Positions 1-15,270 of a stretch of DNA of 64,000 nt are shown one piece after another. The translations under genes were made by a program, and so were the position numbers. Positions within the stretch are counted from its first letter, which is position 1. Every line of letters starts with the position of its first letter. Location: IMG/VR virus record IMGVR_UViG_3300023296_000874, positions 62,001 through 126,000 of that record. One strand, given 5' to 3'. Below the pieces are notes generated by a model. That model searched no databases. It was not told the DNA's origin and saw only the letters and a list, made by a program, of their open reading frames with translations.

Positions 1-36
1 ATGCTCATAATTCCTCGGGTGTCCAGTTACTCCATC

Positions 37-84: not shown

Positions 85-1005
85 TCAGCGGCGGGTACCA
101 GTACGCACCATCAGGTTGAGGGTCTTCCCGCTCACTTTGAAGGTGGCTGTCTGTCCCCATGCGAACTCCAGCCGGTCAGATTCGATGCCGTCCCCGAAGA
201 TGACTCCACCTTCCTGCATACGCGACGTCACCTTGAGAGGAGCATCCGGCTCCACATACCCTTGCTGGATTGAAACGCCTGAGAAGGGGCTGTCCCAAGC
301 CTCTCTCACCTGAAAGATCAGCACTCCCTCTTCGGGATCTGGGAAGGGCAGAGGGTTCCGGCGCTGTGATGCGACGGAGCTTGCCCAACCCGTACAACCC
401 GTACCGGAGCTGATGATCATACCAGAGGAGCTCTGGTACTCGGTGTGCTGCTCGTAGGCGATGTCGTACTTGGCGCTCTGATGGGAGTGGTGTCCGCAGA
501 ACAGCTCGTTGAGGGCGATGATCTTCCGTCCCTCCTCTTGCGTTTCGTCGTCCTTGATCTCCACCTCCACCATTGAGCGGCGCTGAAGCTTGGCGGTGTT
601 GTTCTTGAGGTAGCCGTAGAGCAAGGGGATCTCCCGCTCACGCCACACCATCATCTTCGCCTTGTAGGAGGTGTCGGGGTTGATCCCGGCGACAGTCTGC
701 CCGTCCAGGTACTTGGCTACGTTCGGGACCAAGCCGTCCTGCCCCACAGCAACGATGATGTCACCGGGCTGAAAGACAAACCTGTCCAGATCGCTCCGGA
801 GGCAGCTCGTCTTTCGCCAGGTGTGTGGTACATCGCGGAGGGCACGGGCAGCAACTTTCAAGGTGACGGCGTGCATCCGTTCCACCTTGTCCATCGACTG
901 CCCCATCAGCTCAAGCCTGAACCTCGCCATCTGAACGGTCCCGTGCTCTACGAGCAGAGATTCGTACTCGGTGGTTCTGCGAACCACTACTACTCGAGGT
1001 TCCAC
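85..1005 (-). CDS. NAD kinase-like protein (SPFH-associated subfamily)
   Basis: GQDG in place of the NADK GGDG motif (VAVGQDGLVPNVAKY), ALNE motif and SSGMIISSGTGCTGW. Lies directly downstream of the SPFH gene, as in bacterial NUDIX-SPFH-NADK-like operons. Confidence 0.8.
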   Translation of the reverse strand: MEPRVVVVRRTTEYESLLVEHGTVQMARFRLELMGQSMDKVERMHAVTLKVAARALRDVPHTWRKTSCLRSDLDRFVFQPGDIIVAVGQDGLVPNVAKYLDGQTVAGINPDTSYKAKMMVWREREIPLLYGYLKNNTAKLQRRSMVEVEIKDDETQEEGRKIIALNELFCGHHSHQSAKYDIAYEQHTEYQSSSGMIISSGTGCTGWASSVASQRRNPLPFPDPEEGVLIFQVREAWDSPFSGVSIQQGYVEPDAPLKVTSRMQEGGVIFGDGIESDRLEFAWGQTATFKVSGKTLNLMVRTGTRR

Positions 1006-1014
1006 GGCTGCCTC

Positions 1015-2133
1015 CTACTTGCTGAGCTGCTGCACAGCTTCCAGCAGTCCGCCACCAATGGTCACGGAGCTGAGGTTGCTGAGGCCTGCGGGGATGCCCT
1101 GGATGGCCAGTGCGAGTGCGGCTTCACCCTTCTCCTCGAAGGCTGCGAGCTGAGCCTCAACCTCGGCCACGCGGGCTTCACCGAGCGCCTCTTCCTGAGC
1201 GACGGTCTGAGCGTCCACGGAGATCCGAATGGCGAGTGCCTGCTCGTCGGAAGCAGCCTTGTTCTCGAGGCGCTGGGCCTCGGCGTTGGCGGCGTCCTCG
1301 AGCTGACGTGCGGAGGTGAGCTCCTGAGCCCTGAGGTTGGCCTCAGTCTTCTTGCGCCCCTGCTCCAACTCGGCGTCCGTGCGGATGCTCACAACAGCAG
1401 CGGAGCTGGCTTCCGAGGCCTCACTGTTCACGCGGTCCTGAGCGATCAGGGCCTCGCGCTGCTTGGCGAGCAGAAGCTTGTTGTTCAGTGCCGCTTCCTC
1501 GATGGCACGCTCCTTCTCAGTAGCGTTGGCACGCCGGTCGAAGGTGGCCTCGTCAGCTTCCTGCTTGAGGCGCTCGTTGGTCTTGGTCTGGAGGGCCTGA
1601 GCAACGTCCCGGTTGGGCTTGATGCTGGTCACGCTTGCGGCGAACACCTCGATGCCGATGTCCAGCGCCTGGAGGGCGGCAAGCACAACGTCGGAGATGG
1701 CCTTGGGGTCATCCACAAGCAGCGGCTCGAGCTCCTGCTGGGAGATGTAGCTCCACGCCGCCTGCTGCGCCGTGTTGGTCAGCACCGTGGCGATGTCCGT
1801 GGAAGGGTCGCCCAGCGGAGTGCCGGTGTCGGTGTCCACAGCGAAGTTGAAGCGGGAGGCGATGTTGAGCGCCGCTTCAACTCCTACGCGCCACTGGCCC
1901 GTCGCGCTGACGGTGACGTCCTGGAAGTCCTTGGTGCGGCAGTTGAAGGTCAGCGGGACGGTCTGGTCCACGACTGGTACCTCAGAGAGGCTCGTGCCCT
2001 TGGTCCAGAACCACAGCCAGAAGCTGAGGCCGGTGCCGCTCTTGGTGACCTTGCCACCTGCAGATGCGATCAGAAAAGTGTGAGCCTCGCCACGCACGTT
2101 GCGTAGAGGCCCGAAGGTTGAGATGGTTGCCAT
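1015..2133 (-). CDS. SPFH/band 7 (flotillin-like) domain protein
   Basis: N-terminal band-7 signature (GLSFW...TKDFQDVTV), ALQT...LKQEADEATFDRRA..EKERAIEE motif, long Ala/Glu coiled coil. Confidence 0.85.
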   Translation of the reverse strand: MATISTFGPLRNVRGEAHTFLIASAGGKVTKSGTGLSFWLWFWTKGTSLSEVPVVDQTVPLTFNCRTKDFQDVTVSATGQWRVGVEAALNIASRFNFAVDTDTGTPLGDPSTDIATVLTNTAQQAAWSYISQQELEPLLVDDPKAISDVVLAALQALDIGIEVFAASVTSIKPNRDVAQALQTKTNERLKQEADEATFDRRANATEKERAIEEAALNNKLLLAKQREALIAQDRVNSEASEASSAAVVSIRTDAELEQGRKKTEANLRAQELTSARQLEDAANAEAQRLENKAASDEQALAIRISVDAQTVAQEEALGEARVAEVEAQLAAFEEKGEAALALAIQGIPAGLSNLSSVTIGGGLLEAVQQLSK

Positions 2134-2230
2134 CTTGTGTCTCCGTGATTGGGCTTGTCGCCCTTGGGTTCATACCCTCCTACTGTTCACGGTTGAAGGC
2201 GGGATAGGTTCCCGCCGACGCACATACTTT

Positions 2231-2449
2231 TCAAACGCCCTTGATGTCCCGTAGTCGCTTGAGCTCAAACGGGCTCGCGTGTTCGGTCCAATGGGTCCAC
2301 GGGTCCACACCCAGTTCCTTGCCGACGTACTCGATGTTCTCGAGCTCCTTGCCCAGATCCGTTTCCCCGACGCCATGTGGGTCGTCGGAGAAGAGGTCGA
2401 GGTAGAGCTCGAACAGCTCGGCAACGAATTCCTGGGTGCGTGGTGTCAC
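2231..2449 (-). CDS. hypothetical protein (72 aa, acidic)
   Basis: Start overlaps the stop of the upstream DUF3228 gene (GTGA); codon style typical of the window. Confidence 0.6.
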   Translation of the reverse strand: MTPRTQEFVAELFELYLDLFSDDPHGVGETDLGKELENIEYVGKELGVDPWTHWTEHASPFELKRLRDIKGV

Positions 2450-3090
2450 TCGGCAGTCTCCCGCGCGGCGAGCATTCCCTTGCCGTTCCAGAAGGTCACG
2501 GCAGCACGCAGGGCAGCTTCAAACTGCACGGCGTCCATGTTGGTGCTCGAGCCGCCGTCGAGGCCGAAGTGGTTCGCCATGAGCGTACCCGGCGTCATCG
2601 GCTGGTCGCCTTCGGTCAGCTTGCCGAGAAGTGTCACCACCTCCCACTCGCTGCCGTTCAGCTCGTCCAGACGCTCCGTGTCCTCTTCGAGAACCGAGCG
2701 GTTGTAGAGCACCACATCCACCCACATCGCCGCAGAAGGGATGCGCGGGCTTCCCAGCTTGTTGATGCGAGCCACCTTGGAGCTCTTGCGGGGCTTCTCA
2801 CCCTCGCGCCGAGCCTTGTACTCCACCACGAAGCGGTCGTCCGGGGTGATGTCCACCACGGGGCAGGTGAAGAAGGTCTCGTCGAACAGCGCGAACACGT
2901 TCAGCGGTACGATGATCACACCGTCCCGGTAGCCCTCACGCTGAGCCGCCCATTCGAGCTGCACTGCCTCCACAAGGATGTCCCACCGCTGGGTGCCCGC
3001 GTCGTCCAAGCACAGGAACTCCGTGAAAGAGGTTCCGGTGCGGTGGTGGTTCTTGCAGAAGCCACTGACGGTGATATCTTGTTTCGGCAT
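2446..3090 (-). CDS. DUF3228-like protein
   Basis: Motifs Y.ARR..E.P, DVVLYNR, WEVV, QPMTPGTLMAN..G..GGS, AV.FW resemble DUF3228. Start moved to ATG 3090 (AAGGA RBS), downstream of the promoter at 3131-3157. Confidence 0.65.
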   Translation of the reverse strand: MPKQDITVSGFCKNHHRTGTSFTEFLCLDDAGTQRWDILVEAVQLEWAAQREGYRDGVIIVPLNVFALFDETFFTCPVVDITPDDRFVVEYKARREGEKPRKSSKVARINKLGSPRIPSAAMWVDVVLYNRSVLEEDTERLDELNGSEWEVVTLLGKLTEGDQPMTPGTLMANHFGLDGGSSTNMDAVQFEAALRAAVTFWNGKGMLAARETAE

Positions 3091-3130
3091 TTGGGTCCGT
3101 TCCTTGGGTCGTTGTCCGTAGTGCTCCCCC

Positions 3131-3157
3131 AACGCATCACGCGGGGGAGCACTCAGA
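3131..3157 (-). promoter_or_regulatory. Class A promoter motif TCTGAGT-N16-CGTT overlapped by a 10-bp GC hairpin
   Basis: Minus strand reads tctgagt-gctcccccgcgtgatg-cgtt; inverted repeat gtgctccccc/gggggagcac at 3121-3152. Confidence 0.65.
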
Positions 3158-3165
3158 GGTTTTCT

Positions 3166-3855
3166 CTACTCGTCGGCCTCGGCTGCAGCGGCAGCAGCTT
3201 CCCGCGCGGTCTTGTTGGCGCGGTCGCAGCCTTCGATCTTGTCGATGAGCCCGTACTCCAGAGCCTCCTCGGCGGTCATCCAGTTGTCGAGCTGCATGTC
3301 GGCTTCGAGCTTCTCGAAGCTCTGGCCGCAGTTCTCGGCCAGCAGCCGGGTCAGCTTCTGGTGGAGGCGGTCTGTGTGCGCCATCGCCGCCTTCATGTCC
3401 TTGTACTTGCCCTGGTTGCCCGAGCTCAGCTCGTGGATCATGATCTCGCTGTTGGGGAGCGCCGAGCGGTTGCCCGCCGAGCCCGCACTGAGCAGGAAGC
3501 TACCCATGGAAGCCGCCATACCCACGACGGTCGTGTGGACGGGGCTGTCGATGAGCTGCATGGTGTCGTAGAGCGCGAGGCCGTCGATCACCGAGCCACC
3601 GGGGCTGTTGATGTACATCATGATGGGCTTGCCGGGAGCGTCCGCCTCGAGGAAGAGGAGCTGCCCAATGGCGATGCGCATCGAAACGCTGTCCACCTGG
3701 GTGCCGACGTAGATGATGCGGTCCCGCATGAGCCGGGAGAACAGGTCGAAACTCCGCTCCATTCGGCCATCGGATTCCACCACGACGGGGATGTTGTAGT
3801 TGGCAGGCAGTCCGCCGAGGGAGGCGAGTACTTCGAGCTGTTCACGAGTGGGCAT
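3166..3855 (-). CDS. clpP: ATP-dependent Clp protease proteolytic subunit
   Basis: IPVVVE..GRMERSFDLFSRLMRDRII, YINSPGGSV, catalytic AASMG (Ser), IMIHE (His), DNWMTAEEALEYGLID. Start set at ATG 3855 after ACGGAG. Confidence 0.95.
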   Translation of the reverse strand: MPTREQLEVLASLGGLPANYNIPVVVESDGRMERSFDLFSRLMRDRIIYVGTQVDSVSMRIAIGQLLFLEADAPGKPIMMYINSPGGSVIDGLALYDTMQLIDSPVHTTVVGMAASMGSFLLSAGSAGNRSALPNSEIMIHELSSGNQGKYKDMKAAMAHTDRLHQKLTRLLAENCGQSFEKLEADMQLDNWMTAEEALEYGLIDKIEGCDRANKTAREAAAAAAEADE

Positions 3856-3909
3856 TTGGTGCTCCGTTGAGGTCATTTTCACAGGACGGTGATCGGGTTT
3901 CAATAGTGC

Positions 3910-3937
3910 AACGAGTTCAACCGGCGTCGAACTCAGA
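3910..3937 (-). promoter_or_regulatory. Class A promoter motif (17-nt spacer) upstream of clpP
   Basis: Minus strand reads tctgagt-N17-cgtt. Confidence 0.55.
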
Positions 3938-3948
3938 GCGTTTCTGGA

Positions 3949-4674
3949 TCAGCCCGTCGCCCGAGCCTTGTCGCCCAACACGCTGTCGGCCGTCACGAAG
4001 GTTGCGCCCGCATCACCGAGGGTGCGGAGGCTGAAGTTCATGCCACCCTCGTCACCGCTCACGGGAGGCACATCGAGCGCCACACAGGCGTCGGTCACCA
4101 CTTCCACGGTGTAGCCACGCTCGAGCAGTCCGGTCACGAAGCCGTCAACGCAGAAGCCGCCGAGGCAGTAGCCAAACACGCGGAAGATCACGTTGTCCTT
4201 GCCGCCCATCTCTTCCACGAGGTGTGCGATGTACGCCTCAGCGATGGGGTTGCTGAAGGCGCTGTACACCTCCTTCTCGAAGTAGAGGCCGACGCCCGCA
4301 AGAGCCTCGGTCGTGAACTCCGTGGAGCCGTACACGCGGGGGCCGTTCCCAGCCTTGTCCTCGCCGATGCAGCCGTCGCCACCCCAGCTCATGGGGAGGA
4401 AGCGGAAGCGGGGAGGCAGCGTGCCGTCGAGCTTCAGCCAGTCCCAGGTGCCCTTGACGGCGTGGGTGGGGAAGATGCCACCGTTGTCGATGAACTCCCA
4501 AGCGTCGTAGCTGTGGCTGTCCACGCAGCCAATGAGGGGCTCGTTGGTGGCAAGGGCGCGAGCCACAAGGCCACGAATGCGGTCGTTGACGGTGTCGTCA
4601 GCGACGGAGAGGTTGCCGTCCTTGTGTGCGAAGGCGTTGGCGGTGTCGACGTCGACGTTGATGTAGCGGGCCAT
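3949..4674 (-). CDS. Nicotinamidase/isochorismatase-family cysteine hydrolase (PncA-like)
   Basis: Catalytic Asp (INVD), Lys (FEKEVYSAF) and Cys (GFCV); metal ligands DSH and FPTHAVKGT; G.L.V and VVTDAC motifs. Confidence 0.8.
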   Translation of the reverse strand: MARYINVDVDTANAFAHKDGNLSVADDTVNDRIRGLVARALATNEPLIGCVDSHSYDAWEFIDNGGIFPTHAVKGTWDWLKLDGTLPPRFRFLPMSWGGDGCIGEDKAGNGPRVYGSTEFTTEALAGVGLYFEKEVYSAFSNPIAEAYIAHLVEEMGGKDNVIFRVFGYCLGGFCVDGFVTGLLERGYTVEVVTDACVALDVPPVSGDEGGMNFSLRTLGDAGATFVTADSVLGDKARATG

Positions 4675-4676
4675 GA

Positions 4677-5336
4677 TCAGGTCTCCTTGGAGAAGCGGTA
4701 GGTTGTTCGTCGGCCTTTGCTCTGCTCAGTCACCGGTTCGATGACGCCCAGCGCAGTAGCCTTCTTTCTCAAGTTCGAGCTGTCTTCCGCCTTGCCCGTG
4801 ATGTGTCCCATCAGGTCGCGGTAGTCGCTCATGTTGAAGTTCATGTAGAGGAAGCCCGCAACCACGTCCGGGTCGTAGCGGTGCTTCTTGAGGAATTCCT
4901 GAGCGAACTCAAGGATGCCCCGATGGTCGAATGCAAGGTCCATGTTCAGCGCAGCGGCGAGTGGCGTCCACCCGTCGTGTCCCCTGAATACGTGGGAGAT
5001 CGGGCAGATGTGCGCCACGCTGAGCACCTTGTCGCGGGTGTCCCGGTCGAAGCCGTCAAAGACGTGCATCTGTACCGGTTGAACCTGCGCGTGTGCCTCG
5101 GGCACGTAGCGTCGTAGGGAGCGGCGTACCGCATCAAAGAGGAGTTCGTTGGGCTTCACAAACGCGCCGGGGAGCGCCAACTGGCCCATCGCCGGAGGGT
5201 TGCGCCGCCTGATGAGCTTCACGCGGAGCTCAGGGTCTACCACTACAACGTCCACCGCCAGAGGCGGGTTCTTGTACTGCGAACGGTCGTAGTCCGCAAA
5301 GTACTCTTCGTCGGTGATGTGGGTTTCGTCGGGCAC
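4677..5336 (-). CDS. NrtR-like regulator (Nudix + winged helix) with degenerate Nudix box
   Basis: Y..P.LAVDVVV, LIRR..PP..GQLALPGAFV, RD.R, LAFDH..I, C-terminal wHTH (SNLRKK...GRRTTYRF). The Nudix box reads E.LFDAVRRSLRRY and lacks the REUXEE glutamates. Confidence 0.8.
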   Translation of the reverse strand: MPDETHITDEEYFADYDRSQYKNPPLAVDVVVVDPELRVKLIRRRNPPAMGQLALPGAFVKPNELLFDAVRRSLRRYVPEAHAQVQPVQMHVFDGFDRDTRDKVLSVAHICPISHVFRGHDGWTPLAAALNMDLAFDHRGILEFAQEFLKKHRYDPDVVAGFLYMNFNMSDYRDLMGHITGKAEDSSNLRKKATALGVIEPVTEQSKGRRTTYRFSKET

Positions 5337-5356
5337 GCTGGTTATTCCTACTTGTT

Positions 5357-5413
5357 ACTTGGTACGTTTTACCTTGTTGTCAGTATAACGCCAGCGATGT
5401 GCAGAAAGTTAGA
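5357..5413 (-). promoter_or_regulatory. Class A promoter (5387-5413) with two GT-N7-AC cores, candidate NrtR operators
   Basis: tctaact-ttctgcacatcgctgg-cgtt. GT-N7-AC cores at 5362-5372 and 5379-5389 in an AT-rich intergenic stretch; the flanking palindromy is only partial. Confidence 0.55.
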
Positions 5414-5426
5414 CTTTCATTTCGAA

Positions 5427-5762
5427 CTATTCGCCATCCAATTCGCTCTTGAGGTAGGAGATGGTGCGGTCGATGTCCGGGTCGGCCAGGTAGAACCGAG
5501 CCGTGTGGTAGGGAGTGGCGTCATGGTGGCGATACATCACCACGAACCAGCCTTGTGCCTCGAAATACGTCCGGAAGCCCTCATGGTCAGGGGGCCGCAG
5601 CGACACGTCTCGGTCGCTGTACCCTCGCTCTCGGAGTCGGGCCACCCAACTGGGGTAGCGAGAGAATCCCTGGATAGTGCTCTGCGCGGCTTGGTGAGCC
5701 TCTACGGTCAGTCCCACGATCTCCGGAATGAACGGGATCGGTACCTCACAGGTGTCAAGCAT
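5427..5762 (-). CDS. hypothetical protein
   Basis: ATG 5762 preceded by GGGGAG; the longer ORF-track version overlaps the neighbouring gene. Confidence 0.55.
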   Translation of the reverse strand: MLDTCEVPIPFIPEIVGLTVEAHQAAQSTIQGFSRYPSWVARLRERGYSDRDVSLRPPDHEGFRTYFEAQGWFVVMYRHHDATPYHTARFYLADPDIDRTISYLKSELDGE

Positions 5763-5805
5763 GTACTCCCCTTCTAAGCACTCAACGTGGTCAGGTACGG
5801 AATAC

Positions 5806-6120
5806 TCAGAGGTATTTCGGGTCCTGCCACCAGTCCTGGCTTTCCAAATCAAGCATCTCGTAGAGGCGGTCTGGAAGTTCCGACAGCCCTTCCTCCCTGA
5901 ACCACTCCCCACGCCACCGAATGCGGTAGCTGCGAAGTCGCCCATGGATGTAGAACTCGGTGGGTCCCTCTTTGGGGACGAGCAGGATGACCTTCAGCGT
6001 GTAGGGGTTCCCGGTCTGAAGCTCGTTGAGGCGGCGCTCAATGTCCTTGGTGCGTCCGATCTTCACCACCCCGGTCACCGCCGCTTGGATGATGTACAGG
6101 TCCTCCCCAAACGATTTCAC
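5806..6120 (-). CDS. T5orf172 / GIY-YIG superfamily nuclease
   Basis: LYIIQ....VKIGRT.DIERRL.ELQTGNP..L, E..IH..L, RGEWF. Confidence 0.85.
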   Translation of the reverse strand: MKSFGEDLYIIQAAVTGVVKIGRTKDIERRLNELQTGNPYTLKVILLVPKEGPTEFYIHGRLRSYRIRWRGEWFREEGLSELPDRLYEMLDLESQDWWQDPKYL

Positions 6121-7073
6121 AGGAAGAACGGGCTCTCCTCTACTACCGGCTGAGCAGGCAGGAGGAAAGAGACGTAGCGGGGTGAGGGGTCGAACGGATT
6201 GAACTTGCGCTTGTAGGTCGCGTTGAAGCCATGCTTGCCACCTTCACCGATGGCTACTCCATCAGCTACGTGGGTCACACCCTGTCGCGCCATGTCGGCA
6301 AAGCAGTCGTGTTGAGCCCATGCACTCAGGTTCGGTATGCCTCTGTCACATGCCATGCCTGTCGTGTGGCCCCAGCACGTTTCTGTCATGGGTTGGTTGA
6401 GGTGGATCACGAGCGGCTCTCCGTCAATGCGGTAGAGCCGGTTGATGCCGTCCTCGTAGTGCCGGTCGAGAATGTACTCGTATTTCCGGTAGTTGATGTT
6501 CATGCCGCCGCGCTCCTTGGACTCCTTGACCCAACGCTTCATCACCGCGCGGGCCTCCTCCAGGTTTCCGGAGTCGATGGGCTCAGCCGTGTAGCCGGTG
6601 GTGGTCCGCTTGAAGGCGTTGATGTCAGCTCGGAGGCGACGCCACTTCTTTCCAGAGAGTGTGTCGATCCCTGCAATGTCGTAGGTGTACTCGCCGTACT
6701 CACTGAATTTCCCAGGAGTGAGCTTGACGCCCTCTGCCATGAAGGCCGCAGCGATATCAGCGGCCCAGGAGGCTGGGACGTTCTCAATCTTGAGGTTCTT
6801 GTCCGTGCTTCCCTTGTACGCCTGCCACCACGCAACCAACTCGGGAATGACTGCGTCCTTGTCACCGTAGGCTCGGTAGACACGGTAGTATTTCCCGTAC
6901 TTCACACTGAAGAGGAGAAGCGTGTCCTCGCTGACGACCTTGTTGCCCTTGAACACTCCGTGGTTGATGAACCCGTAAGTGTAGGGGAGGCAGTCGGTCA
7001 TTGTAGCTACACCGTCCATACGTGAACGGATGAAGGGGATGTCTGCCGTGGTCAGCGGGGTAGTTTCACTCAT
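6117..7073 (-). CDS. DUF2156 / LPG-synthase C-terminal-like double-GNAT protein (putative aa-tRNA-dependent transferase), copy 2
   Basis: EYTYD....LSGKKWRRLRADINAFKR, W....K, GVTHVADG...G...K.KF.P match the DUF2156 pattern; paralogous to 7791-8759. Confidence 0.65.
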   Translation of the reverse strand: MSETTPLTTADIPFIRSRMDGVATMTDCLPYTYGFINHGVFKGNKVVSEDTLLLFSVKYGKYYRVYRAYGDKDAVIPELVAWWQAYKGSTDKNLKIENVPASWAADIAAAFMAEGVKLTPGKFSEYGEYTYDIAGIDTLSGKKWRRLRADINAFKRTTTGYTAEPIDSGNLEEARAVMKRWVKESKERGGMNINYRKYEYILDRHYEDGINRLYRIDGEPLVIHLNQPMTETCWGHTTGMACDRGIPNLSAWAQHDCFADMARQGVTHVADGVAIGEGGKHGFNATYKRKFNPFDPSPRYVSFLLPAQPVVEESPFFL

Positions 7074-7809
7074 CGAAGAGGCTCATGTATTCGTGGTCAT
7101 CACCACCCAAGATGTCCGGGTGGATCAGGCGCTCGGGAACGTCGGGAGCTTCTGCGCCGCCTGAGGTCTCCCGGTGAAGGTAGAAGGGCCGGTTGTACTT
7201 GAGAACCGTCGTAGGGAGGAAGTCCCTCGGGCCTGTGTAGTAGAAACCGTCCACGCCGGTAGATGCAGCGATGGCTGCTTCCATGCGCGGGTCAAGAGTG
7301 GCAACCGGAATGCCCTGGCTCTTGAACTTGAGCGTGATGACTGCGTAGCCCTTCTCGGCCTTGGCGTTCAAGAGGTCGAACAGCATCCCAACGTCTTCGG
7401 GTCCGGTGGTGGTGAACAGCACGCCGCAAGAGAGGACGAAGTCCCACGTCGGGGCCTTGTTCAGCTCTTCCCAGTAGTTCCCGATGCGGAAGTCGTACTC
7501 CGGCACTCGGGTTCGGGCGTCCAGCACGTTGGCAGGGACGATGTCGAACCCTTGGTACTTCAGCTCGGGCCTCTGGTCGCGTAGCATCTCAGCCAGCGTG
7601 CCCGTGCCGCACCCACACTCGAGAATGGAGGTGGCGTTGGCTGGGATCAGGTCGATGAGGCCCTGCCAATGAGCAACCATGTCCTCGGGAGAGTACTTGT
7701 ACCACTTGAAGCGGGTGGTGTCGTCAGGGTCCTCGTACTTCCCGGCTGACCGAGTGTAGGAGTCCCGCCAACGGAGGATCGTTTCATCTGCTACTGGAAT
7801 GGAAGACAT
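7066..7809 (-). CDS. Class I SAM-dependent methyltransferase
   Basis: SILECGCGTG motif I, YQGFDI motif II, WDFVLSCGVL. Confidence 0.85.
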   Translation of the reverse strand: MSSIPVADETILRWRDSYTRSAGKYEDPDDTTRFKWYKYSPEDMVAHWQGLIDLIPANATSILECGCGTGTLAEMLRDQRPELKYQGFDIVPANVLDARTRVPEYDFRIGNYWEELNKAPTWDFVLSCGVLFTTTGPEDVGMLFDLLNAKAEKGYAVITLKFKSQGIPVATLDPRMEAAIAASTGVDGFYYTGPRDFLPTTVLKYNRPFYLHRETSGGAEAPDVPERLIHPDILGGDDHEYMSLFDE

Positions 7810-8759
7810 TCATCATCCTCATACTTGCCGTCAATGGCCAGCCTGACACCGGACACGGCACCCTCGATAGGGCGGAATTTGTCCTTGTTCTTGAAGTTGG
7901 CGACACGCTGTCCATCTGCGATGTGCGTGACGCCGCGTTGCTGAAGAAGGCAGAACGCCTCCCAGCTTGACCACTCCCACAGGCCTCGGGGCCTGAACAG
8001 CGTGCCGTCTTCCTGCTCGGTGCCCAAAGCAATCCCAAGAGTGTGAGCCCAGCACGTGTCGGTGATCTTGTGCATGATCTGAAGGGCTACGGGCTCTCCC
8101 GCCACCTTGTAGAGCAGATGCATACAATCGTCGGTCCTGAAGTTGTCGAAGGCGTAGGTGTACTGCTTGAAGTTGAGGTTGAAGACGTTCCTCACCTTCC
8201 TTGCCTGACGTGCCCACTCCTTGATGACGTACCATGCCTCCGTGTGCGTGACGTCCTCTACAACCTGGATCACTTCCCGTTCGGGGTTGTCCCTCTTGAA
8301 CTTATTGAGGTCCCGGCGAAGCCTGACGTACTTCTTGCCCGGCATCTCGGTGATGCAGTCGATGGGAATCACGTCCTCGGGCCACACGTTGCGCTCCACG
8401 GAGCCAGCGATGGTGTCGAGGTACGGGAAGAGTGCCTGTCCGGTCTCCTCCGCGAGGTACATGAAGATCAGCTTGTCAGCCTCGTCGCGATAGCGGGCAA
8501 TCCACGCCTTGAGCAGCTCAAGCTGGTCAGGCAGTGGTCCCCAAGAGCGGTAGACGCGGTAGTAGGTCTTCCCCTTGCCACGTTTGATGTGAAACAGCAA
8601 TGCCGCCGTGTCACTCTCGTAGAGATGCGCCTTGAAGGAGCTGTTCGCTCCCAGTGCGTAGGGAGGGCAGTCGTAGTAGCTCAGACTGTCCTCAGGTACG
8701 AGCGAGGCTACACGCGCCGCTGACGCTGGGGTCATGTCTGTCGTCTGAATGTCAGTCAT
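7791..8759 (-). CDS. DUF2156-like double-GNAT protein, copy 1
   Basis: EMPGKKYVRLRRDLNKFKR, YYRVYR, TCWAHTLG, GVTHIADG, K.KFRP. Clear paralog of 6117-7073. Confidence 0.65.
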   Translation of the reverse strand: MTDIQTTDMTPASAARVASLVPEDSLSYYDCPPYALGANSSFKAHLYESDTAALLFHIKRGKGKTYYRVYRSWGPLPDQLELLKAWIARYRDEADKLIFMYLAEETGQALFPYLDTIAGSVERNVWPEDVIPIDCITEMPGKKYVRLRRDLNKFKRDNPEREVIQVVEDVTHTEAWYVIKEWARQARKVRNVFNLNFKQYTYAFDNFRTDDCMHLLYKVAGEPVALQIMHKITDTCWAHTLGIALGTEQEDGTLFRPRGLWEWSSWEAFCLLQQRGVTHIADGQRVANFKNKDKFRPIEGAVSGVRLAIDGKYEDDECLPFQ

Positions 8760-9603
8760 TCATCTTGTCCGGCTGCATGAAGGTTTGCCTCACTCCGATT
8801 ACCCAGAACAAGTCACCTGGCTCGATAAAGGGAATCGATTTCGCTTCATAGATCGGGTCAAGAGCGATACCACGCCAATACGGGTCCTTGTAGGGCTGAT
8901 GGTAGTCGAGAGGAGAGCGAACGAGCGTGACCATGTCCTTCCAATGGGTGTCACGGATGTTGACCATGACGTCGCTGTCAGCTTCTTCCCACATGGAGGA
9001 GTAGTCGTTGGTGATGGGAGCGTACTTTCCAAGCCTGTCGTTGGGGTCTGCGCCCACTACAACGCCGAGCACGGGTACGTCCCACCCAATGTCGAGCAGT
9101 CCGTGGAGAAGGCCGGACAGGCTCATAGCTGAACCCACAGGAATGACGATGCGCTTCGCTTCTCGTGGAAGGTTCGCTGCCTGCCCACGGGTCTGCTGCA
9201 CGGCTTCCCAGCAATCCATTCCGAAGGGGATGTCTGCCCACCCGAGCCTCTTGGCGTCTTCCCGAGCTCGAGAGATGATGACGCTGTTGTAGCCCGCGCG
9301 GTGTTGAACCACCTCAGCTCCAGCGGCCTTGGCAGCGAGTACCTCGGGCGACAATTCACCTTCGGGAGTGTGAACCCTACACGGAATGCCGAGCTTCTGG
9401 GCGATGTGGGCGACGATGTTCACCTGCGGGCTGGATCGGCTACCCGCCGTCACCAAACCCTTCGCTCCTTGAGCGAGGTGCCAACAGGTGCGAACTTTCC
9501 CACCCGGTACTCCTCCTACAATGAACTTGTCGTCGCGCTTGACCCACACATCCCCGTGTTTCTCAACAGGGGTGAGGGCCTTGGGGTCCGTTACATGATC
9601 CAC
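8752..9603 (-). CDS. Fold-type II PLP-dependent enzyme (ACC-deaminase/TrpB-like; phage hypermodification-type)
   Basis: LTPVE...VWVKRDD....GGKVR (PLP lysine), VIPVGSAMSLSG phosphate loop, LDPIYEAK, LFWVIG. Confidence 0.85.
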   Translation of the reverse strand: MDHVTDPKALTPVEKHGDVWVKRDDKFIVGGVPGGKVRTCWHLAQGAKGLVTAGSRSSPQVNIVAHIAQKLGIPCRVHTPEGELSPEVLAAKAAGAEVVQHRAGYNSVIISRAREDAKRLGWADIPFGMDCWEAVQQTRGQAANLPREAKRIVIPVGSAMSLSGLLHGLLDIGWDVPVLGVVVGADPNDRLGKYAPITNDYSSMWEEADSDVMVNIRDTHWKDMVTLVRSPLDYHQPYKDPYWRGIALDPIYEAKSIPFIEPGDLFWVIGVRQTFMQPDKMND

Positions 9604-9664
9604 GTACTGTCCTCCGAGTGGTGCTCAGAGTCCAGTAACGGTCGAAAACGGTCCAAGTAGGCAA

Positions 9665-9994
9665 TCAGACCCGCTTCGTCACCTTGACTACTGCTTGGTA
9701 GAGGTCCGGCAGGCTCTCTTTGCCGCCCTTGGACTCTACGTTGTCCCAGTGAATGAGTGCCACAACCTGCGCGGTGTGGTCTCCATCAGCCATCCGCCTG
9801 GCAAGCTGTCCACCATCTCGAGCAGCGCCCTTCCGATCCGCGTCGGGAGAGGTGTACTCGTACTTGCCGGAGTCGGTCAAGCCTCGTGGTCGTCGGTCAG
9901 CGGCCCGGAGGATGTCCTTCCAGTTCGGATGGGGGAGGTCAGCCAGCAGTTCAGCGTGCTTCAAGGTGTCAATTCGGATGACGTGGTCTTGCAT
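9665..9994 (-). CDS. hypothetical protein
   Basis: Translationally coupled to rmlA (TGATG overlap). Confidence 0.6.
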   Translation of the reverse strand: MQDHVIRIDTLKHAELLADLPHPNWKDILRAADRRPRGLTDSGKYEYTSPDADRKGAARDGGQLARRMADGDHTAQVVALIHWDNVESKGGKESLPDLYQAVVKVTKRV

Positions 9995-10719
9995 CAGATC
10001 TCCCTCAGGGTGTCACGGATGTACGCGCCAGCTCTGAACAGTGATTCAAACGTTCCAGCGTCCGTCCACCACCCGTCACATACCCTGAAGCTGAGCTCGC
10101 CGCTTCGGAGGTAGTAGAGATGGAGGTCGGTCACTTCGAGCTCGCCCCGTTCGGAGGGCTCAAGTCGGTCAATCACGTCCCACACACGCCGGTCAAAGCA
10201 GTAGAGGCCCGTGATTGCGAGTGGGGAGATGTACTCTTTCGGCTTCTCGATGATGTGGGTCACCTTGGGGCCGCGCACCACAGCTACGCCGAAGCGGTGA
10301 GGGTCGTCCACCTCTTTGAGGAGGATGCGCCCACCACTGTCGAAGGAGCGGATGAAGTCCTCGGTCACACCAGGCTCGAACACGTTGTCGCCCAAGATGA
10401 CACACACGTCATCCCCGTCAACGAAGTCCTTGGCGTAATGCAGAGCAGCGGGGATACCGCCAGCTCCATCCTGGTAGGTGTAGTGGATGTTCACCTCGGG
10501 GCCGAAGGTCTTCTTCCCGTTGCCCAAGAGCTGAAGGAAGTCACCTGCCCAGTTGCCCCCGGTCACGATCATGATCTCTGTCACCCCTGCGCCCACGAGT
10601 GTCGCGATTGGGTAGTGAATCATGGGCTTGTCGTAGATCGGAAGCAGGTGCTTGTTGGTGACGGCGGTCAGCGGTAGTAGTCGCGAGCCGTACCCGCCTG
10701 CCAAGATGACTCCTTTCAT
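9994..10719 (-). CDS. rmlA: Glucose-1-phosphate thymidylyltransferase (RmlA/SpsI short form)
   Basis: MKGVILAGGYGSRLLPLT..TNKHLLPIYDKPMI, LGDN, IIEKP, SERGELEVTD, WTDAGT. Confidence 0.9.
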   Translation of the reverse strand: MKGVILAGGYGSRLLPLTAVTNKHLLPIYDKPMIHYPIATLVGAGVTEIMIVTGGNWAGDFLQLLGNGKKTFGPEVNIHYTYQDGAGGIPAALHYAKDFVDGDDVCVILGDNVFEPGVTEDFIRSFDSGGRILLKEVDDPHRFGVAVVRGPKVTHIIEKPKEYISPLAITGLYCFDRRVWDVIDRLEPSERGELEVTDLHLYYLRSGELSFRVCDGWWTDAGTFESLFRAGAYIRDTLREI

Positions 10720-10745
10720 GTGTATCTCCTTCTGGAGAGCCAGAC

Positions 10746-10773
10746 CTACAAATGGATCATGATCCTTTTGTAG
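10746..10773. promoter_or_regulatory. Back-to-back pair of class B (putative late) promoter motifs
   Basis: Near-palindrome ctacaaatggaTCATGAtccttttgtag gives TCATGATCCATTTGTAG on minus (toward rmlA) and TCATGATCCTTTTGTAG on plus (toward 10810). Confidence 0.7.
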
Positions 10774-10809
10774 ACGCCGGATGCAAGACCAGTCGTCTCC
10801 GGAGGCATC

Positions 10810-11376
10810 ATGGACCGCATTGCATTTGCTCAGAAGATCAGCCTACTCGCCGACAAGGTGGCGCTGGGCAGCAAGGAGCCTCTCGAGCTCGTACCGGAGG
10901 GAGGCAAGACCCCTTCGAAGAAGGAGATCTCGAAGGCGTGGCCGAACCTCACCTACAAGGGCGACACCATCCACCCTATGAAGAGTGGAAACCTCTACGA
11001 GAAGTGGCAGGACAAGGCTGAGGACAAGCTCCGAGACGATGAGGGCATCGACAGCTTCCAAGAGGTGTATCTCGGGTACGACCCCAAGAAGGACCTCTTC
11101 GTCATGGGTTGGGACCTGTGGCCCGGTGAGGAAGAGTACGACGAGGATGACGAGTACGGAGAAGACGAGGATGGCTACGGACGCTACTCCTCAGAGGGAC
11201 CTCGGAAGGCTGCCGTCAAGAAGCAGGCGAACGACATGGGCTACGCACTCGCCACCATCAAGGATGGCAGGGTGAAGAGCGTTGAGGACTACTGGCCCGG
11301 AGGTGGCTTCTACCGCCACGGGCTCAAGATTGTTCACTCCCACTACAACGGAATCCTCGACCTCAGGCTCGACTGA
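10810..11376 (+). CDS. hypothetical protein with shared N-terminal leader (putative internal virion protein)
   Basis: GGAGG RBS; N-terminus AQKISLLADKVA; acidic central tract. Confidence 0.7.
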   Translation: MDRIAFAQKISLLADKVALGSKEPLELVPEGGKTPSKKEISKAWPNLTYKGDTIHPMKSGNLYEKWQDKAEDKLRDDEGIDSFQEVYLGYDPKKDLFVMGWDLWPGEEEYDEDDEYGEDEDGYGRYSSEGPRKAAVKKQANDMGYALATIKDGRVKSVEDYWPGGGFYRHGLKIVHSHYNGILDLRLD

Positions 11377-12275
11377 TGCACCCAACCCTGAACAGACTTG
11401 CACTCCTTGAGGTCCGGCTCCGCACGGCTGAGATCAGGGAGGCGGTCCGCCATGTGGTAGCCAAGAGCTTCTACCGTAGGCGGGAGGCATCTGTTCGACA
11501 CCTCACTCCGGAGGTGCTGACTGCCTTTGCAGAGGGATTCTGTGAGCAGCCACACAACGTCCGTGAGGCAGGCATTGGCGACATCGTCAAGAAGCTCTCC
11601 AAGCTGGTGAAGCTGTTCCGTCGCGCGCCCAAGCTGCTCGAGCGGATGAAAGAGTTCCTGGGAGATCTTGACCCTCGCACGATCCTGAAGTGGGCGAAGG
11701 ACGGTGTACGTGCTGCCGGGCGGAAGATTCAGAAGGCCGTCAAGTCATGGCCGCTGGCCATGTTCTTCTTCCCCAAGAGCAAGCTTCCGTCACTGAGCGA
11801 CATGATCGCCAACATCGTCAACGGCACCCGGATTGGAGACCTGCTCAAGAAGGTACAGAGCAAGGCGGTGTCGGTAGATGTATGGCTTGAAAAGCACCCT
11901 ATCATCAAGGGGATGTCGAAGCCGGTGCTTGCGGCAGCATTCATCTTCATCTGGATCAACGTCTCTGAGATCTCGTGGGACATGGAGAGCATCTTCCGTG
12001 GCTTCACGGGGCAGATGCCCTTCAGCGAGGTACTGACCTCACTGCCTGAGAGTGCAATCGGCCTGGTGTTTGCCAGCATGGGGATTGGATACGGCTTCAT
12101 GGGACCGGTTCTCATGGCGCGCATCATTTGGCTTGTGGCCTCGAACTACGTCGAGTACGTCCCCGGACGTGGCTTCAAGGTGTTCTGGGACGTCATGGGC
12201 AAGTACACACCGGAGAGCGGTACGTTCCTCGACCGGACGCCTGACGTACAGTTCTTCAAGTGGAGCCCCTCATGA
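11376..12275 (+). CDS. hypothetical protein with hydrophobic C-terminal helices (putative virion/membrane protein)
   Basis: Coupled to the upstream gene; N-terminus LNRLALLEVRLRTA; hydrophobic segments in the C-terminal third. Confidence 0.65.
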   Translation: MHPTLNRLALLEVRLRTAEIREAVRHVVAKSFYRRREASVRHLTPEVLTAFAEGFCEQPHNVREAGIGDIVKKLSKLVKLFRRAPKLLERMKEFLGDLDPRTILKWAKDGVRAAGRKIQKAVKSWPLAMFFFPKSKLPSLSDMIANIVNGTRIGDLLKKVQSKAVSVDVWLEKHPIIKGMSKPVLAAAFIFIWINVSEISWDMESIFRGFTGQMPFSEVLTSLPESAIGLVFASMGIGYGFMGPVLMARIIWLVASNYVEYVPGRGFKVFWDVMGKYTPESGTFLDRTPDVQFFKWSPS

Positions 12276-12685
12276 GCGACAAGACCGCCGCCCGCACCCT
12301 ACGTGAGTTCCTCCTGGCCGGGCAGACTGGACAGGACGATACTCGTGAGCTGCTCCCCTACTCAGGTGTGAACGGACCCAAGGTTCGGACCCTCCCAGAG
12401 GCCATCGCACACTCCAAGACCACGTCAGAGGACAGTGAGGAGTGGTTCAAGGCGAACACCCCGTACCACGGGCGTGATGTGATCGAGCACTTCGACGAGC
12501 TTGTGGGGCAGTTCACCGGGGCAGAGGTACGACCTCGTCCCGGTAGGGACGTTGACCTCATCTCAGGGAAGAGCGGACTCCAAACAAAGGGCTACAGCGA
12601 GGACCACTACACCGCTGTGCCTCAGACCTTCGAGGAGCTTTGCCTCGCGGCAATGGACCAAGAAGGCAAGACACCAAGGGAGTAG
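12272..12685 (+). CDS. hypothetical protein
   Basis: ATGA overlap with the upstream stop; begins MSDKTAART. Confidence 0.6.
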   Translation: MSDKTAARTLREFLLAGQTGQDDTRELLPYSGVNGPKVRTLPEAIAHSKTTSEDSEEWFKANTPYHGRDVIEHFDELVGQFTGAEVRPRPGRDVDLISGKSGLQTKGYSEDHYTAVPQTFEELCLAAMDQEGKTPRE

Positions 12686-14533: not shown

Positions 14534-14535
14534 GA

Positions 14536-15268: not shown

Positions 15269-15270
15269 GA

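What the first reader, a model, noticed from the sequence alone, without database searches (positions are those of the whole stretch)
85..5413. NAD/ADP-ribose response cluster: dead-Nudix NrtR sensor, nicotinamidase, ClpP, DUF3228, SPFH and NAD-kinase-like
The co-oriented cluster is headed by an NrtR-like protein whose Nudix box lacks the catalytic glutamates. NrtR proteins are established ADP-ribose-responsive repressors of NAD salvage genes. NAD-depleting anti-phage effectors (SIR2/TIR) yield ADP-ribose and nicotinamide, the ligand and substrate of the first two genes. Inference: an inducible counter-defence or NAD-reconstitution module distinct from the described NARP1/NARP2 gene sets, joined to the uncharacterised SPFH + NADK-like membrane pair. 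No NAPRTase or NMNAT is visible in the window; the run continues past nt 1.
Basis: partly seen in the sequence, partly recalled or inferred. Interest (0 to 1): 0.7.

Follow-up and report, generated by a model that had tools for sequence, protein, structure and literature searches.

The report
Phage NAD salvage genes with NrtR regulon
A salt-lake jumbo phage carries bacterial NAD-recycling genes (nicotinamidase, a nicotinate phosphoribosyltransferase relative, an NrtR-type regulator) plus a regulator-linked gene pair of unknown function (an SPFH protein and an NAD-kinase-like enzyme). This is a new variant of the known phage habit of rebuilding NAD, and nothing yet shows it is a counter-defence system.

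Summary
The window lies in a 257.5-kb IMG/VR phage record. On the minus strand it encodes:
- an NrtR-like protein with a dead Nudix box
- a nicotinamidase with an intact D-K-C triad and D-H-H metal site
- ClpP
- a split DUF3228 gene
- an SPFH protein
- a protein with an NAD-kinase fold

It is a divergent PncB-type gene. The genome also has Prs and NadD-like genes, but no NadE, NAMPT or PnuC was found in this ~81%-complete record.

Main new result: SPFH + NADK-like is a conserved bacterial pair (79 of 80 loci) with an NrtR gene beside it in 65 of 80. It matches the unexplained "nrtX-nrtY" NrtR targets of Rodionov 2008 in Proteus and Streptomyces.

ClpP and DUF3228 sit behind their own phage-wide promoter-like motifs and occur in none of the bacterial modules, so they are probably passengers.

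NrtR-headed NAD clusters also exist in Bacillus phage G and in huge phage LR756504.

The counter-defence reading is untested. The candidate operators do not rise above chance, and "membrane pair" is unsupported.

Verdict: a new variant of a known kind, of moderate interest.

The parts
4677..5336 (-). NrtR-like regulator (219 aa): degenerate Nudix domain plus C-terminal winged helix
   Evidence: 3gz5 2.9e-15; AraR 5bs6 5e-12. The Nudix box is dead. The relative L106 keeps the same dead box, and its C-terminal region is strongly conserved. The protein sits on a very long branch in the NrtR tree.
3949..4674 (-). PncA-type nicotinamidase (241 aa) with a ~40-aa insertion
   Evidence: Invariant D10/K134/C175 and D52/H54/H71. 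The family profile's best PDB hits are nicotinamidases. Homologues lie in Myxococcota operons of the form pncB-like, nadE, pncA, nrtR.
3166..3903 (-). ClpP protease subunit (245 aa), a probable passenger
   Evidence: Pfam 2.7e-63, NCBIfam ClpP 2.5e-71. It has its own promoter-like motif at 3910-3938. It is absent from the bacterial NrtR modules and present in the same order in relatives L095/L106.
2446..3132 (-). DUF3228 protein, N-terminal part (likely start ATG at 3090)
   Evidence: Pfam 1.5e-11. Only three clusters were found among 5.8 billion proteins, this phage's own included. It is 66% identical to L095:447-1292. Promoter-like motif at 3131-3158.
2231..2449 (-). 72-aa ORF: the detached C-terminal piece of the DUF3228 protein
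   Evidence: It aligns to residues 221-276 of the single 281-aa ORF of relative L095.
1015..2133 (-). Soluble SPFH/Band_7 protein with a long C-terminal helical region (372 aa); equals nrtX
   Evidence: Pfam 3e-15. No transmembrane segment. It lies immediately upstream of the kinase in 79/80 bacterial loci. The arrangement in Proteus and Streptomyces matches nrtX-nrtY (PMC2330246).
85..1005 (-). NAD-kinase-fold protein (306 aa); equals nrtY
   Evidence: AF2 pLDDT 91. All 50 best listed Foldseek matches are NAD kinases. Conserved GxDG, NE and TGTGxTGW motifs. The family has 5249 database hits.
1..8 (-). First codons of a 523-aa divergent PncB-type NAPRTase (genome 60437-62008)
   Evidence: TIGR01513 1.2e-24, PF04095 over cut-off in the genome search. 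Family profile: 2f7f 3.5e-32 and human NAPRT 1.3e-29, against ~1e-9 for animal NAMPTs and 4e-13 over the N-terminal part only for a bacterial NAMPT-related entry. Homologous to the first gene of the Myxococcota pncB-like, nadE, pncA, nrtR operons.
5337..5426 (-). 90-nt leader of nrtR holding two GT-N7-AC 21-mers (5355-5375, 5374-5394) and the palindrome GAAAGT-N3-ACTTTC (5404-5418)
   Evidence: The core resembles the GTA-N5-TAC cores of sites found upstream of nrtR in bacterial loci L029 and L041 and upstream of the salvage genes in phage LR756504. It is not significant against shuffles.
5784..5811 (-). Phage-wide promoter-like motif CTCTGAGT-N16-CGTT upstream of a small ORF (about 5427-5762) that precedes nrtR
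2198..2216 (-). Hairpin GGCGGGA-N5-TCCCGCC between the DUF3228 pieces and SPFH
   Evidence: A hairpin stands at the same place in relative L095.

Best explanation
This is a mosaic of host-derived NAD-metabolism genes in a jumbo phage of salt lakes, whose closest cellular homologues are in Myxococcota.

Shown:
- The phage encodes a nicotinamidase (nicotinamide to nicotinate) and a divergent PncB-type NAPRTase (nicotinate + PRPP to NaMN).
- Elsewhere in the genome it encodes a Prs-like PRPP synthetase and a NadD-like adenylyltransferase. Together these cover the Preiss-Handler route up to NaAD.
- No NAD synthetase was found in the ~81%-complete record.
- The phage also carries the bacterial NrtR-regulon pair SPFH + NAD-kinase-fold enzyme (nrtX-nrtY) and one highly diverged NrtR-family protein with a dead Nudix box.

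Inferred:
- During infection these genes recycle nicotinamide and keep up the NAD(P) pool.
- The NrtR-like protein binds DNA as a repressor and lets go when ADP-ribose, the other product of NAD cleavage, accumulates. It would tune at least the nrtR-pncA unit.
- The kinase phosphorylates NAD(H) or a closely related adenine dinucleotide, with the SPFH protein as its partner.
- ClpP and the split DUF3228 gene are passengers with their own phage promoters.

Whether the benefit to the phage is general metabolic supply or escape from NAD-depleting defence is open.
For: Gene identities.

Salvage genes outside the window: NAPRTase, Prs-like (TIGR01251 146.9 bits, over its 113-bit cut-off), NadD-like.

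Bacterial sources:
- Myxococcota operons pncB-like, nadE, pncA, nrtR.
- nrtR, SPFH, NADK-like module in 65/80 loci, and SPFH-kinase in 79/80, across at least six phyla.
- 21-bp GT-N7-AC palindromes in front of the module.
- The Proteus divergent arrangement and the Streptomyces unlinked arrangement are as listed for nrtX-nrtY in PMC2330246.

Phage relatives:
- Gene order is kept in a relative with 66-78% amino-acid identity (L095, L096, L106).
- A more distant relative has nrtR-like, pncA ... a 521-aa ORF with no Pfam hit (the size of the pncB-like gene; homology not tested, no DNA held), nadE.

Independent precedents of NrtR-headed NAD clusters in phages:
- Bacillus phage G gp273-gp283.
- LR756504, an NrtR with a NAMPT cluster and NrtR-type sites.

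ADPR release of NrtR from DNA is established for two bacterial NrtRs (PMC2330246).
Against: - No activity, expression or regulation data exist, and no RNA run was listed.
- The phage NrtR-like protein is extremely diverged (branch 3.9 changes per site) and its WHD hit is below Pfam's cut-off.
- The candidate operators score no better than shuffled DNA, and none precedes SPFH, the NAPRTase, Prs or NadD.
- NadE is missing from the record.
- The PncB-like, NadD-like and NADK-like proteins all fall below curated NCBIfam cut-offs, so their substrates could differ.
- ClpP lies near an NrtR in a second, unrelated huge phage, so 'passenger' may be wrong.
Confidence: 0.6

Rival explanations
1. This is a dedicated, ADP-ribose-induced counter-defence regulon. 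Host SIR2/TIR-type NADases make ADPR and nicotinamide. ADPR releases the phage NrtR, which switches on PncA and PncB-based resynthesis and the SPFH-kinase pair, and so rescues the phage from abortive infection.
For: - The ligand and substrate logic fits the first two genes.
- Three other phage NAD pathways are proven anti-defence systems (bioRxiv 10.1101/2024.02.11.579819; PMC13464706).
- NrtR-headed NAD clusters recur in three unrelated large phages.
- In one Haliangium-like contig the bacterial module sits next to a SIR2_2 gene.
Against: - No operator rises above chance, and none precedes the other genes.
- The genes lie in several transcription units with constitutive-looking phage promoters.
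- The route needs four to five steps and a NadE that the record lacks.
- There are no PADLOC matches apart from one sub-threshold ShosT match on the Prs-like protein.
- Jumbo phages carry NAD genes widely, and a plain metabolic reading has been offered for them (PMC11662467).
Confidence: 0.22
2. The phage NrtR-like protein acts on the host rather than on phage genes. As a diverged copy, it would occupy host NrtR operators or pair with host NrtR, and so reprogramme the host NAD regulon. The neighbouring phage genes would be expressed independently.
For: - The protein is extremely diverged, yet its C-terminal DNA-binding part is conserved between phage relatives.
- There is no convincing operator in the phage genome.
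- Infection by jumbo phage PA5oct up-regulates the host's pncA-pncB1-nadE operon (PMC7318152); that operon is listed as a predicted NrtR target in Pseudomonas aeruginosa (PMC2330246).
Against: - The host is unknown, so its operators cannot be compared.
- Tight nrtR-pncA spacing (2 nt) is conserved in relatives.
- In LR756504, NrtR-type sites do precede phage salvage genes.
Confidence: 0.1
3. The neighbourhood is accidental. These are unrelated accessory genes that accumulated in a variable region of a jumbo phage and share no function.
For: - Related phage contigs have different inserts between pncA and the pncB-like gene.
- DUF3228 sits next to RtcB in another relative.
- ClpP and DUF3228 have separate promoter-like motifs and hairpins.
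Against: Five of the genes (NrtR, PncA, PncB-like, SPFH, NADK-like) belong to two bacterial modules that are each NrtR-linked. That is unlikely by chance in 6 kb.
Confidence: 0.08

Closest known systems
Bacterial NrtR regulons (Rodionov et al. 2008, PMC2330246), including pncA-pncB(-nadE) operons and the unexplained nrtX-nrtY pair
   Same: - A regulator with a Nudix-like domain and a winged helix next to pncA.
- A PncB-type gene.
- SPFH + NADK-like arranged as in the nrtR<>nrtX-nrtY loci of Proteus and the unlinked nrtX-nrtY of Streptomyces.
- GT-N7-AC palindromes in front of the bacterial copies.
   Different: - Here the genes lie in a phage.
- Two separate bacterial modules are merged beside a single, very diverged NrtR.
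- Gene order is nrtR-pncA rather than pncA-nrtR.
- ClpP and DUF3228 are intercalated.
- No significant operator was found.
Bacillus phage G gp273-gp283 (NC_023719)
   Same: A jumbo phage with a true NrtR (NUDIX + NrtR_WHD, 3.3e-9) heading an isochorismatase, NAPRTase, NadD and NadE cluster.
   Different: - Phage G has canonical PncB, NadD and NadE in one cluster plus KptA.
- It has no SPFH, NADK-like, ClpP or DUF3228 gene there.
- Its NrtR is annotated only as a MutT/NUDIX hydrolase.
NAD-jumbo phages with Preiss-Handler clusters (PMC11662467)
   Same: Large phages that carry pncB/nadD/nadE-type genes in clusters.
   Different: That paper does not mention NrtR or NAD kinase, and was not searched for SPFH. 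This phage lacks NadE in the record.
NARP1, NARP2 and NARP3 phage NAD reconstitution pathways
   Same: A phage-encoded route that turns NAD breakdown products or precursors back into NAD.
   Different: - No Namat or NAMPT: only a NAPRTase-clade protein was found.
- No PnuC.
- The route goes through nicotinate and needs NadE.
- None of the NARP sets is described with an NrtR regulator or an NAD-kinase-like gene in the papers read.
NAD kinases (for example human mitochondrial NADK2, 7r4j)
   Same: The same fold (TM 0.74) and GxDG, NE and glycine-rich motifs.
   Different: - About 20% identity.
- No Pfam NAD_kinase hit, and scores are far below NCBIfam cut-offs.
- It is always paired with an SPFH protein.
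- Its substrate is unknown.

Membership tests
NrtR family of Nudix-related regulators | N-terminal Nudix-fold effector domain (often non-catalytic) | tested here: met
   PF00293 2.9e-5, over its cut-off. 3gz5 2.9e-15 over residues 5-193. The box is degenerate, as it is in 60 of 72 NrtRs of the bacterial loci examined.
NrtR family of Nudix-related regulators | C-terminal NrtR-type winged-helix DNA-binding domain | tested here: inconclusive
   PF21906 scores 19.8 bits against a cut-off of 27. However, the NCBIfam NrtR model aligns residues 6-210 and AraR 5bs6 aligns to residue 204. The region is the best-conserved part in relative L106.
NrtR family of Nudix-related regulators | 21-bp palindromic operator with a GT-N7-AC core upstream of target genes | tested here: inconclusive
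   Two such 21-mers lie in the nrtR leader (5355-5375, 5374-5394). A PWM built from 14 sites (12 from bacterial NrtR modules, 2 from phage LR756504) scores them at or below shuffled maxima, and there are none at the other genes.
NrtR family of Nudix-related regulators | DNA binding relieved by ADP-ribose | not testable with these tools
   Needs EMSA or ITC.
PncA nicotinamidase | Asp-Lys-Cys catalytic triad | tested here: met
   D10, K134 and C175 are invariant in 19 homologues. The regions holding D10 and C175 align to PncA 1ilw.
PncA nicotinamidase | Asp-His-His metal site that sets nicotinamidases apart from other isochorismatase-fold hydrolases | tested here: met
   D52, H54 and H71 are invariant. 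The motif DSH...FPxH(C/A)VKGT aligns to the nicotinamidases 1ilw, 2h0r and 29iv.
PncB nicotinate phosphoribosyltransferase | Type II PRTase core closest to NAPRTases, with the conserved His of the GTxxH motif | tested here: met
   Family profile: 2f7f 3.5e-32 and 4yub 1.3e-29, against ~1e-9 for animal NAMPTs and 4e-13 over the N-terminal part only for a bacterial NAMPT-related entry. The motif G281-H282-E283 is invariant and aligns to GTHAHS.
PncB nicotinate phosphoribosyltransferase | Score above the curated equivalog cut-off | tested here: not met
   TIGR01513 scores 87 bits against a cut-off of 297. The protein belongs to a small separate subfamily of 344 representative clusters.
NAD kinase | NAD-kinase two-domain fold with GGDG-type, NE and glycine-rich motifs | tested here: met
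   All 50 best listed Foldseek matches are NAD kinases. Motifs GxDG, ALNE and TGTGxTGW are conserved.
NAD kinase | Family-model membership and NAD phosphorylation | tested here: not met
   No Pfam hit. NCBIfam scores are about 20 bits against cut-offs of 211-316. Activity cannot be tested here.
NARP1 (Adps + Namat) | NAMPT-like Namat next to a PRPS-like Adps | tested here: not met
   The only PF04095 protein belongs to the NAPRTase clade. The Prs-like gene lies about 8.5 kb further along the same strand and passes the Prs subfamily cut-off.
NARP2 (NAMPT + NMNAT) | Nicotinamide phosphoribosyltransferase | tested here: not met
   No NAMPT-type match in the genome. The record is about 81% complete.
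NARP3 (PnuC + NadR) | PnuC-like transporter | tested here: not met
   PF04973 was not found in the genome. NadR was not searched for.
SPFH/Band 7 membrane scaffolds | SPFH domain | tested here: met
   PF01145 3e-15.
SPFH/Band 7 membrane scaffolds | N-terminal membrane anchor | tested here: not met
   There is no hydrophobic segment at the N-terminus. The highest 19-residue Kyte-Doolittle mean is 1.74, inside the domain. The bacterial family consensus also starts without one.

The most novel reading that the evidence does not exclude
The SPFH + NAD-kinase-fold pair (nrtX-nrtY) is an ADP-ribose-induced response to NAD cleavage that is widespread in bacteria. In this reading a scaffolded kinase converts NAD, or a cleavage-derived nucleotide, into a phosphorylated form. 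This phage has captured the pair together with an NrtR sensor and Preiss-Handler enzymes, making a fourth, regulated type of phage NAD-reconstitution and counter-defence system.
Probability: 0.15. Interest if true: 0.8.

Novelty: new variant of a known kind. Interest (0 to 1): 0.55.

Why it matters
NAD depletion is a major bacterial anti-phage strategy, and three phage pathways that rebuild NAD have been described since 2024.

- This locus shows that large phages also carry the bacterial sensor of NAD cleavage (NrtR) with their salvage genes. That is true of this phage, of Bacillus phage G and of a 636-kb huge phage.
- It puts a name and a fold on nrtX-nrtY, predicted NrtR targets left unexplained since 2008: a soluble SPFH protein and an NAD-kinase-fold enzyme. 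The pair is conserved across at least six phyla.
- That makes a long-standing gap directly testable: what does a cell, or a phage, switch on besides NAD synthesis when ADP-ribose rises?

Tried and rejected
- Megablast of the region against 50,697 phage records found no match.
- tblastn of PncA and of the NADK-like protein against phages found no match.
- IMG/VR pattern scans with single proteins found no relatives.
- PADLOC gave no hits apart from one sub-threshold ShosT match on the Prs-like protein.
- The NrtR tree cannot place the phage protein with either the pncA-linked or the SPFH-linked NrtRs, because its branch is too long.
- Complex prediction of SPFH with the kinase, using paired alignments, returned 'no answer' and is not evidence either way.
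- The Atlas search for DUF3228 returned only low-scoring leads.
- No RNA sequencing runs were listed.
- The palindrome GAAAGT-N3-ACTTTC occurs once, which is no more than chance.
- GGTA-N5-TACC occurs 8 times genome-wide, and the only copy next to an NAD gene is the one in the nrtR leader.
- The PWM of 14 NrtR-type sites (12 bacterial, 2 from LR756504) found no site above shuffled maxima.
- An apparent GGAAC-N16-CGT promoter before SPFH was rejected; it is part of a hairpin that is also present in the relative.
- Sampling 201 Actinomycetota genomes gave 5 with the kinase, but organism names are hidden. The nrtX-nrtY identification was therefore made on named plasmid-collection records instead.
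- The 'Acinetobacter phage MD-2021a' hit is a prs, PRTase, nrtR locus flanked by ordinary bacterial genes. I judged it a bacterial contig and disregarded it.
- An active Nudix hydrolase role for 4677-5336 was rejected.
- A Namat or NAMPT identity for the 523-aa protein was rejected.

Full report
**Setting.** The window is bases 62001-126000 of a 257,533-bp IMG/VR virus record that CheckV rates about 81% complete. The window also encodes a Baseplate_J protein, a beta-helix fibre protein, family A DNA polymerase, DnaB, an SNF2 helicase, PhoH and topoisomerase. This is therefore a tailed jumbo phage. Near-identical DNA occurs in many salt-lake metagenomes. It has no close relative in 50,697 deposited phage records.

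**Observation check.**
- NrtR-like protein (4677-5336). It matches NUDIX and, below cut-off, NrtR_WHD. It aligns over nearly its whole length to the NCBIfam ADPR-responsive repressor model, to Shewanella NrtR 3gz5 (2.9e-15) and to Bacteroides AraR. Its Nudix box is G57-x5-N63-x7-RRSLRR, so every catalytic glutamate is lost. That is normal for this family: 60 of 72 NrtRs of the bacterial loci examined also lack a canonical box.
- Isochorismatase-fold protein (3949-4674). This is a nicotinamidase by every sequence criterion. In 19 homologues the triad D10/K134/C175 and the metal ligands D52/H54/H71 are invariant. The family profile finds nicotinamidases first in the PDB (1ilw 3.4e-20, 2h0r, 3r2j, 2wt9, 3pl1).
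- ClpP is unambiguous (2.7e-63).
- 306-aa protein (85-1005). It has no Pfam hit, but a confident model (pLDDT 91) has only NAD kinases among its 50 best listed Foldseek matches. The best is human NADK2 (E 1.3e-19, TM 0.74). The GxDG, NE and TGTGxTGW motifs are conserved.
- Neither this protein nor the SPFH protein has a transmembrane segment, so 'membrane pair' is unsupported.

**Beyond nt 1.** The gene that begins at window nt 8 (genome 60437-62008, 523 aa) is a divergent NAPRTase.
- It scores TIGR01513 1.2e-24 and PF04095 over cut-off in the genome search.
- A profile of 30 family members hits E. faecalis and human NAPRTases at 3.5e-32 and 1.3e-29. Animal NAMPTs reach only ~1e-9, and one bacterial NAMPT-related entry (7yqo) reaches 4e-13 over the N-terminal part alone.
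- Namat, the NARP1 enzyme, is 36% identical to NAMPT (PMC12774641). This protein is therefore not Namat.
- It represents a small subfamily of 344 representative clusters.

Further along the same strand lie LysRS, a 737-aa unknown, an R2K ATP-grasp protein, RlaP, a Prs-like protein that passes the Prs subfamily cut-off, and a polynucleotide kinase. A NadD-like gene lies at about genome 238.6 kb. The only PF02540 signal is an asparagine synthase, so no NadE was found. No NAMPT, PnuC, NAD-dependent ligase or macro domain was found either.

**Where the salvage genes come from.** Homologues of the nicotinamidase (45-58% identical) sit in Myxococcota/Nannocystaceae chromosomes. There they form operons of an unannotated ~450-500-aa gene, nadE, pncA and nrtR. 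The first gene is the homologue of the phage NAPRTase (2e-48 to 3e-63). A related phage-like contig carries nrtR-like, pncA, seven small ORFs, a 521-aa ORF with no Pfam hit (the size of the pncB-like gene; its homology could not be tested because no DNA is held), and nadE. It shares the neighbouring topoisomerase and PALP genes with this phage. A closer relative (66-78% amino-acid identity, three short contigs) keeps the order nrtR, pncA, two small ORFs, ClpP, DUF3228, SPFH, kinase.

**The SPFH-kinase pair.** The kinase family has 5249 database hits. In 80 loci from GTDB species genomes, the SPFH gene lies immediately upstream in 79; the exception is a 1.7-kb contig. An NrtR gene is adjacent in 65. 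None has a homologue of the phage PncA, ClpP, DUF3228, NAPRTase or Prs within 7 kb at phmmer E<=1e-5. The loci span Myxococcota, Alphaproteobacteria, Actinomycetota, Chloroflexota, Planctomycetota and Acidobacteriota. The two genes usually abut or overlap. Several loci carry clear 21-bp GT-N7-AC palindromes just upstream of nrtR.

Rodionov et al. (PMC2330246) listed predicted NrtR targets of unknown function, 'nrtX-nrtY'. They gave them as nrtR<#>nrtX-nrtY in Proteus mirabilis and as an unlinked #nrtX-nrtY in Streptomyces. In a P. mirabilis record I find a divergent nrtR, two operators (TTAATGTCATAAGGACACTAA, 16 of 21 palindromic), then SPFH and the kinase. In a Streptomyces plasmid I find two operators, then SPFH and the kinase, with no nrtR nearby. 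I therefore identify nrtX as the SPFH protein and nrtY as the NAD-kinase-fold protein. I found no later work on them. No deposited phage has the kinase. A co-folding attempt gave no answer.

**ClpP and DUF3228.** Both are preceded by a bipartite motif, CTCTGAGT-N15-17-CGTT. It occurs 16 times in the genome, against 0.15 in shuffles, and 8 times in the window, against 0. Most copies lie about 15-50 nt upstream of a visible ribosome-binding site and start codon, so I read it as a phage promoter class. A third copy precedes the small ORF in front of nrtR. Hairpins follow ClpP and precede SPFH, and hairpins stand at the same places in the relative.

The DUF3228 gene is split. ORF 2231-2449 aligns to the C-terminus of the relative's single 281-aa ORF. 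DUF3228 has only three clusters in 5.8 billion proteins, this phage's own included, and sits beside RtcB in another relative. I conclude that the finding is at least four transcription units, not one operon, and that ClpP and DUF3228 are probably passengers. One caveat: the unrelated huge phage LR756504 also has a ClpP 1.6 kb upstream of its NrtR.

**Regulation.** The nrtR leader (5337-5426) holds two overlapping-adjacent GT-N7-AC 21-mers. Their GTA-N5-TAC core resembles the sites found upstream of nrtR in bacterial loci L029 and L041 and upstream of the salvage genes in LR756504. A PWM built from 14 sites (12 bacterial, 2 from LR756504) ranks one of them third in the genome, but below shuffled maxima, and the other not at all. 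No site precedes SPFH, the NAPRTase, Prs or NadD. The phage protein is a very long branch, so its operator may have drifted. Its C-terminal region is strongly conserved in the relative, which argues that it still binds DNA. Regulation is thus plausible but not shown.

**Precedents in phages.**
- Bacillus phage G encodes gp273, a true NrtR (NrtR_WHD 3.3e-9) annotated only as MutT/NUDIX. It is followed by an isochorismatase, NAPRTase, KptA, NadD and NadE.
- LR756504 encodes a strong NrtR (WHD 1.9e-20), followed by a Nudix fusion and NAMPT, with two NrtR-type sites directly upstream.
- Preiss-Handler clusters in jumbo phages are published (PMC11662467), without mention of NrtR.
- NARP1/2 (bioRxiv 10.1101/2024.02.11.579819) and NARP3 (PMC13464706) use other enzymes.

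**Mechanism.** The best-supported reading is a phage-borne Preiss-Handler salvage set (PncA, PncB-like, Prs, NadD-like, with NadE from the host or from the missing 19% of the genome) plus the NrtR-regulon pair. Together they would keep up NAD(P) in the infected cell, with an ADPR-sensing repressor tuning at least nrtR-pncA (confidence 0.6). Gene identities are shown. Activities, ligand, operator and benefit are inferred. A dedicated ADPR-induced counter-defence regulon is a narrower version of this reading and has no direct evidence (0.22). Action of the phage NrtR on the host regulon (0.1) and accidental juxtaposition (0.08) remain possible.

**Verdict.** This is a new variant of a known kind. 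Its main value is the link it exposes between NrtR, a soluble SPFH protein and an NAD-kinase-fold enzyme, in bacteria and now in a phage.

Noticed in passing
window 3131-3158, 3910-3938, 5784-5811, 14507-14534, 15242-15269, 27806-27833, 33727-33754 (all minus strand), 59281-59308 (plus strand): The bipartite motif CTCTGAGT-N15-17-CGTT occurs 16 times in the genome against 0.15 in shuffles. Most copies lie about 15-50 nt upstream of a visible ribosome-binding site and start codon. It is probably a phage promoter class with ECF-sigma-like architecture. No Sigma70_r2 domain was found in the genome.
   Followed up: partly
window 2231-3132: The DUF3228 gene is split into two overlapping ORFs (2446-3132 and 2231-2449). 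A related phage contig has one 281-aa ORF (L095:447-1292). This could be a frameshift, an assembly error or a real split.
   Followed up: partly
window 6117-7073 and 7791-8759; genome 58817-60310: Two paralogues of the MprF C-terminal (LPG_synthase_C, aminoacyl-tRNA-dependent transferase) domain flank a methyltransferase and a PALP enzyme. A full-length phage lysyl-tRNA synthetase lies 6 kb further along the same strand. This may be a Lys-tRNA-dependent modification system.
   Followed up: no
L109 (LR756504) 5659-12632: A 636-kb huge phage has ClpP, then four small ORFs, a strong NrtR, a Nudix fusion and NAMPT. Two NrtR-type palindromes lie directly before the salvage genes. This is a second case of ClpP near a phage NrtR.
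   Followed up: partly
L107 (Bacillus phage G) 5854-12576: gp273, annotated MutT/NUDIX hydrolase, is a true NrtR. It heads an isochorismatase, NAPRTase, KptA, NadD and NadE cluster.
   Followed up: partly
L014 1470-6679: A Haliangium-like contig has NrtR, DUF4291, Band_7, NADK-like and then a SIR2_2 protein, which hints at a link between the module and NAD-consuming enzymes.
   Followed up: no
L008 10001-11095: A related phage contig encodes a fusion of T5orf172/MUG113 with the nicotinamidase-like domain. In the window, a stand-alone T5orf172 gene (5806-6120) lies two genes upstream of nrtR.
   Followed up: no
genome 30769-31131, 41281-41595, 168650-168973, 186306-186668, 216274-216597: Five further Nudix ORFs with strong matches lie in the same phage genome, one of them inside a 697-aa open frame. 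Any of them could be an ADP-ribose pyrophosphatase.
   Followed up: no
genome 49352-58813 (L003 3352-12813): An RNA-repair-like set lies on the same strand further along from the NAD genes: polynucleotide kinase/phosphatase, RlaP, an R2K ATP-grasp protein and a 737-aa unknown.
   Followed up: no
genome 238610-250000: Other host-like metabolic genes occur here: methylthioribulose-1-phosphate dehydratase next to the NadD-like gene, and a glutamine-hydrolysing asparagine synthase.
   Followed up: no
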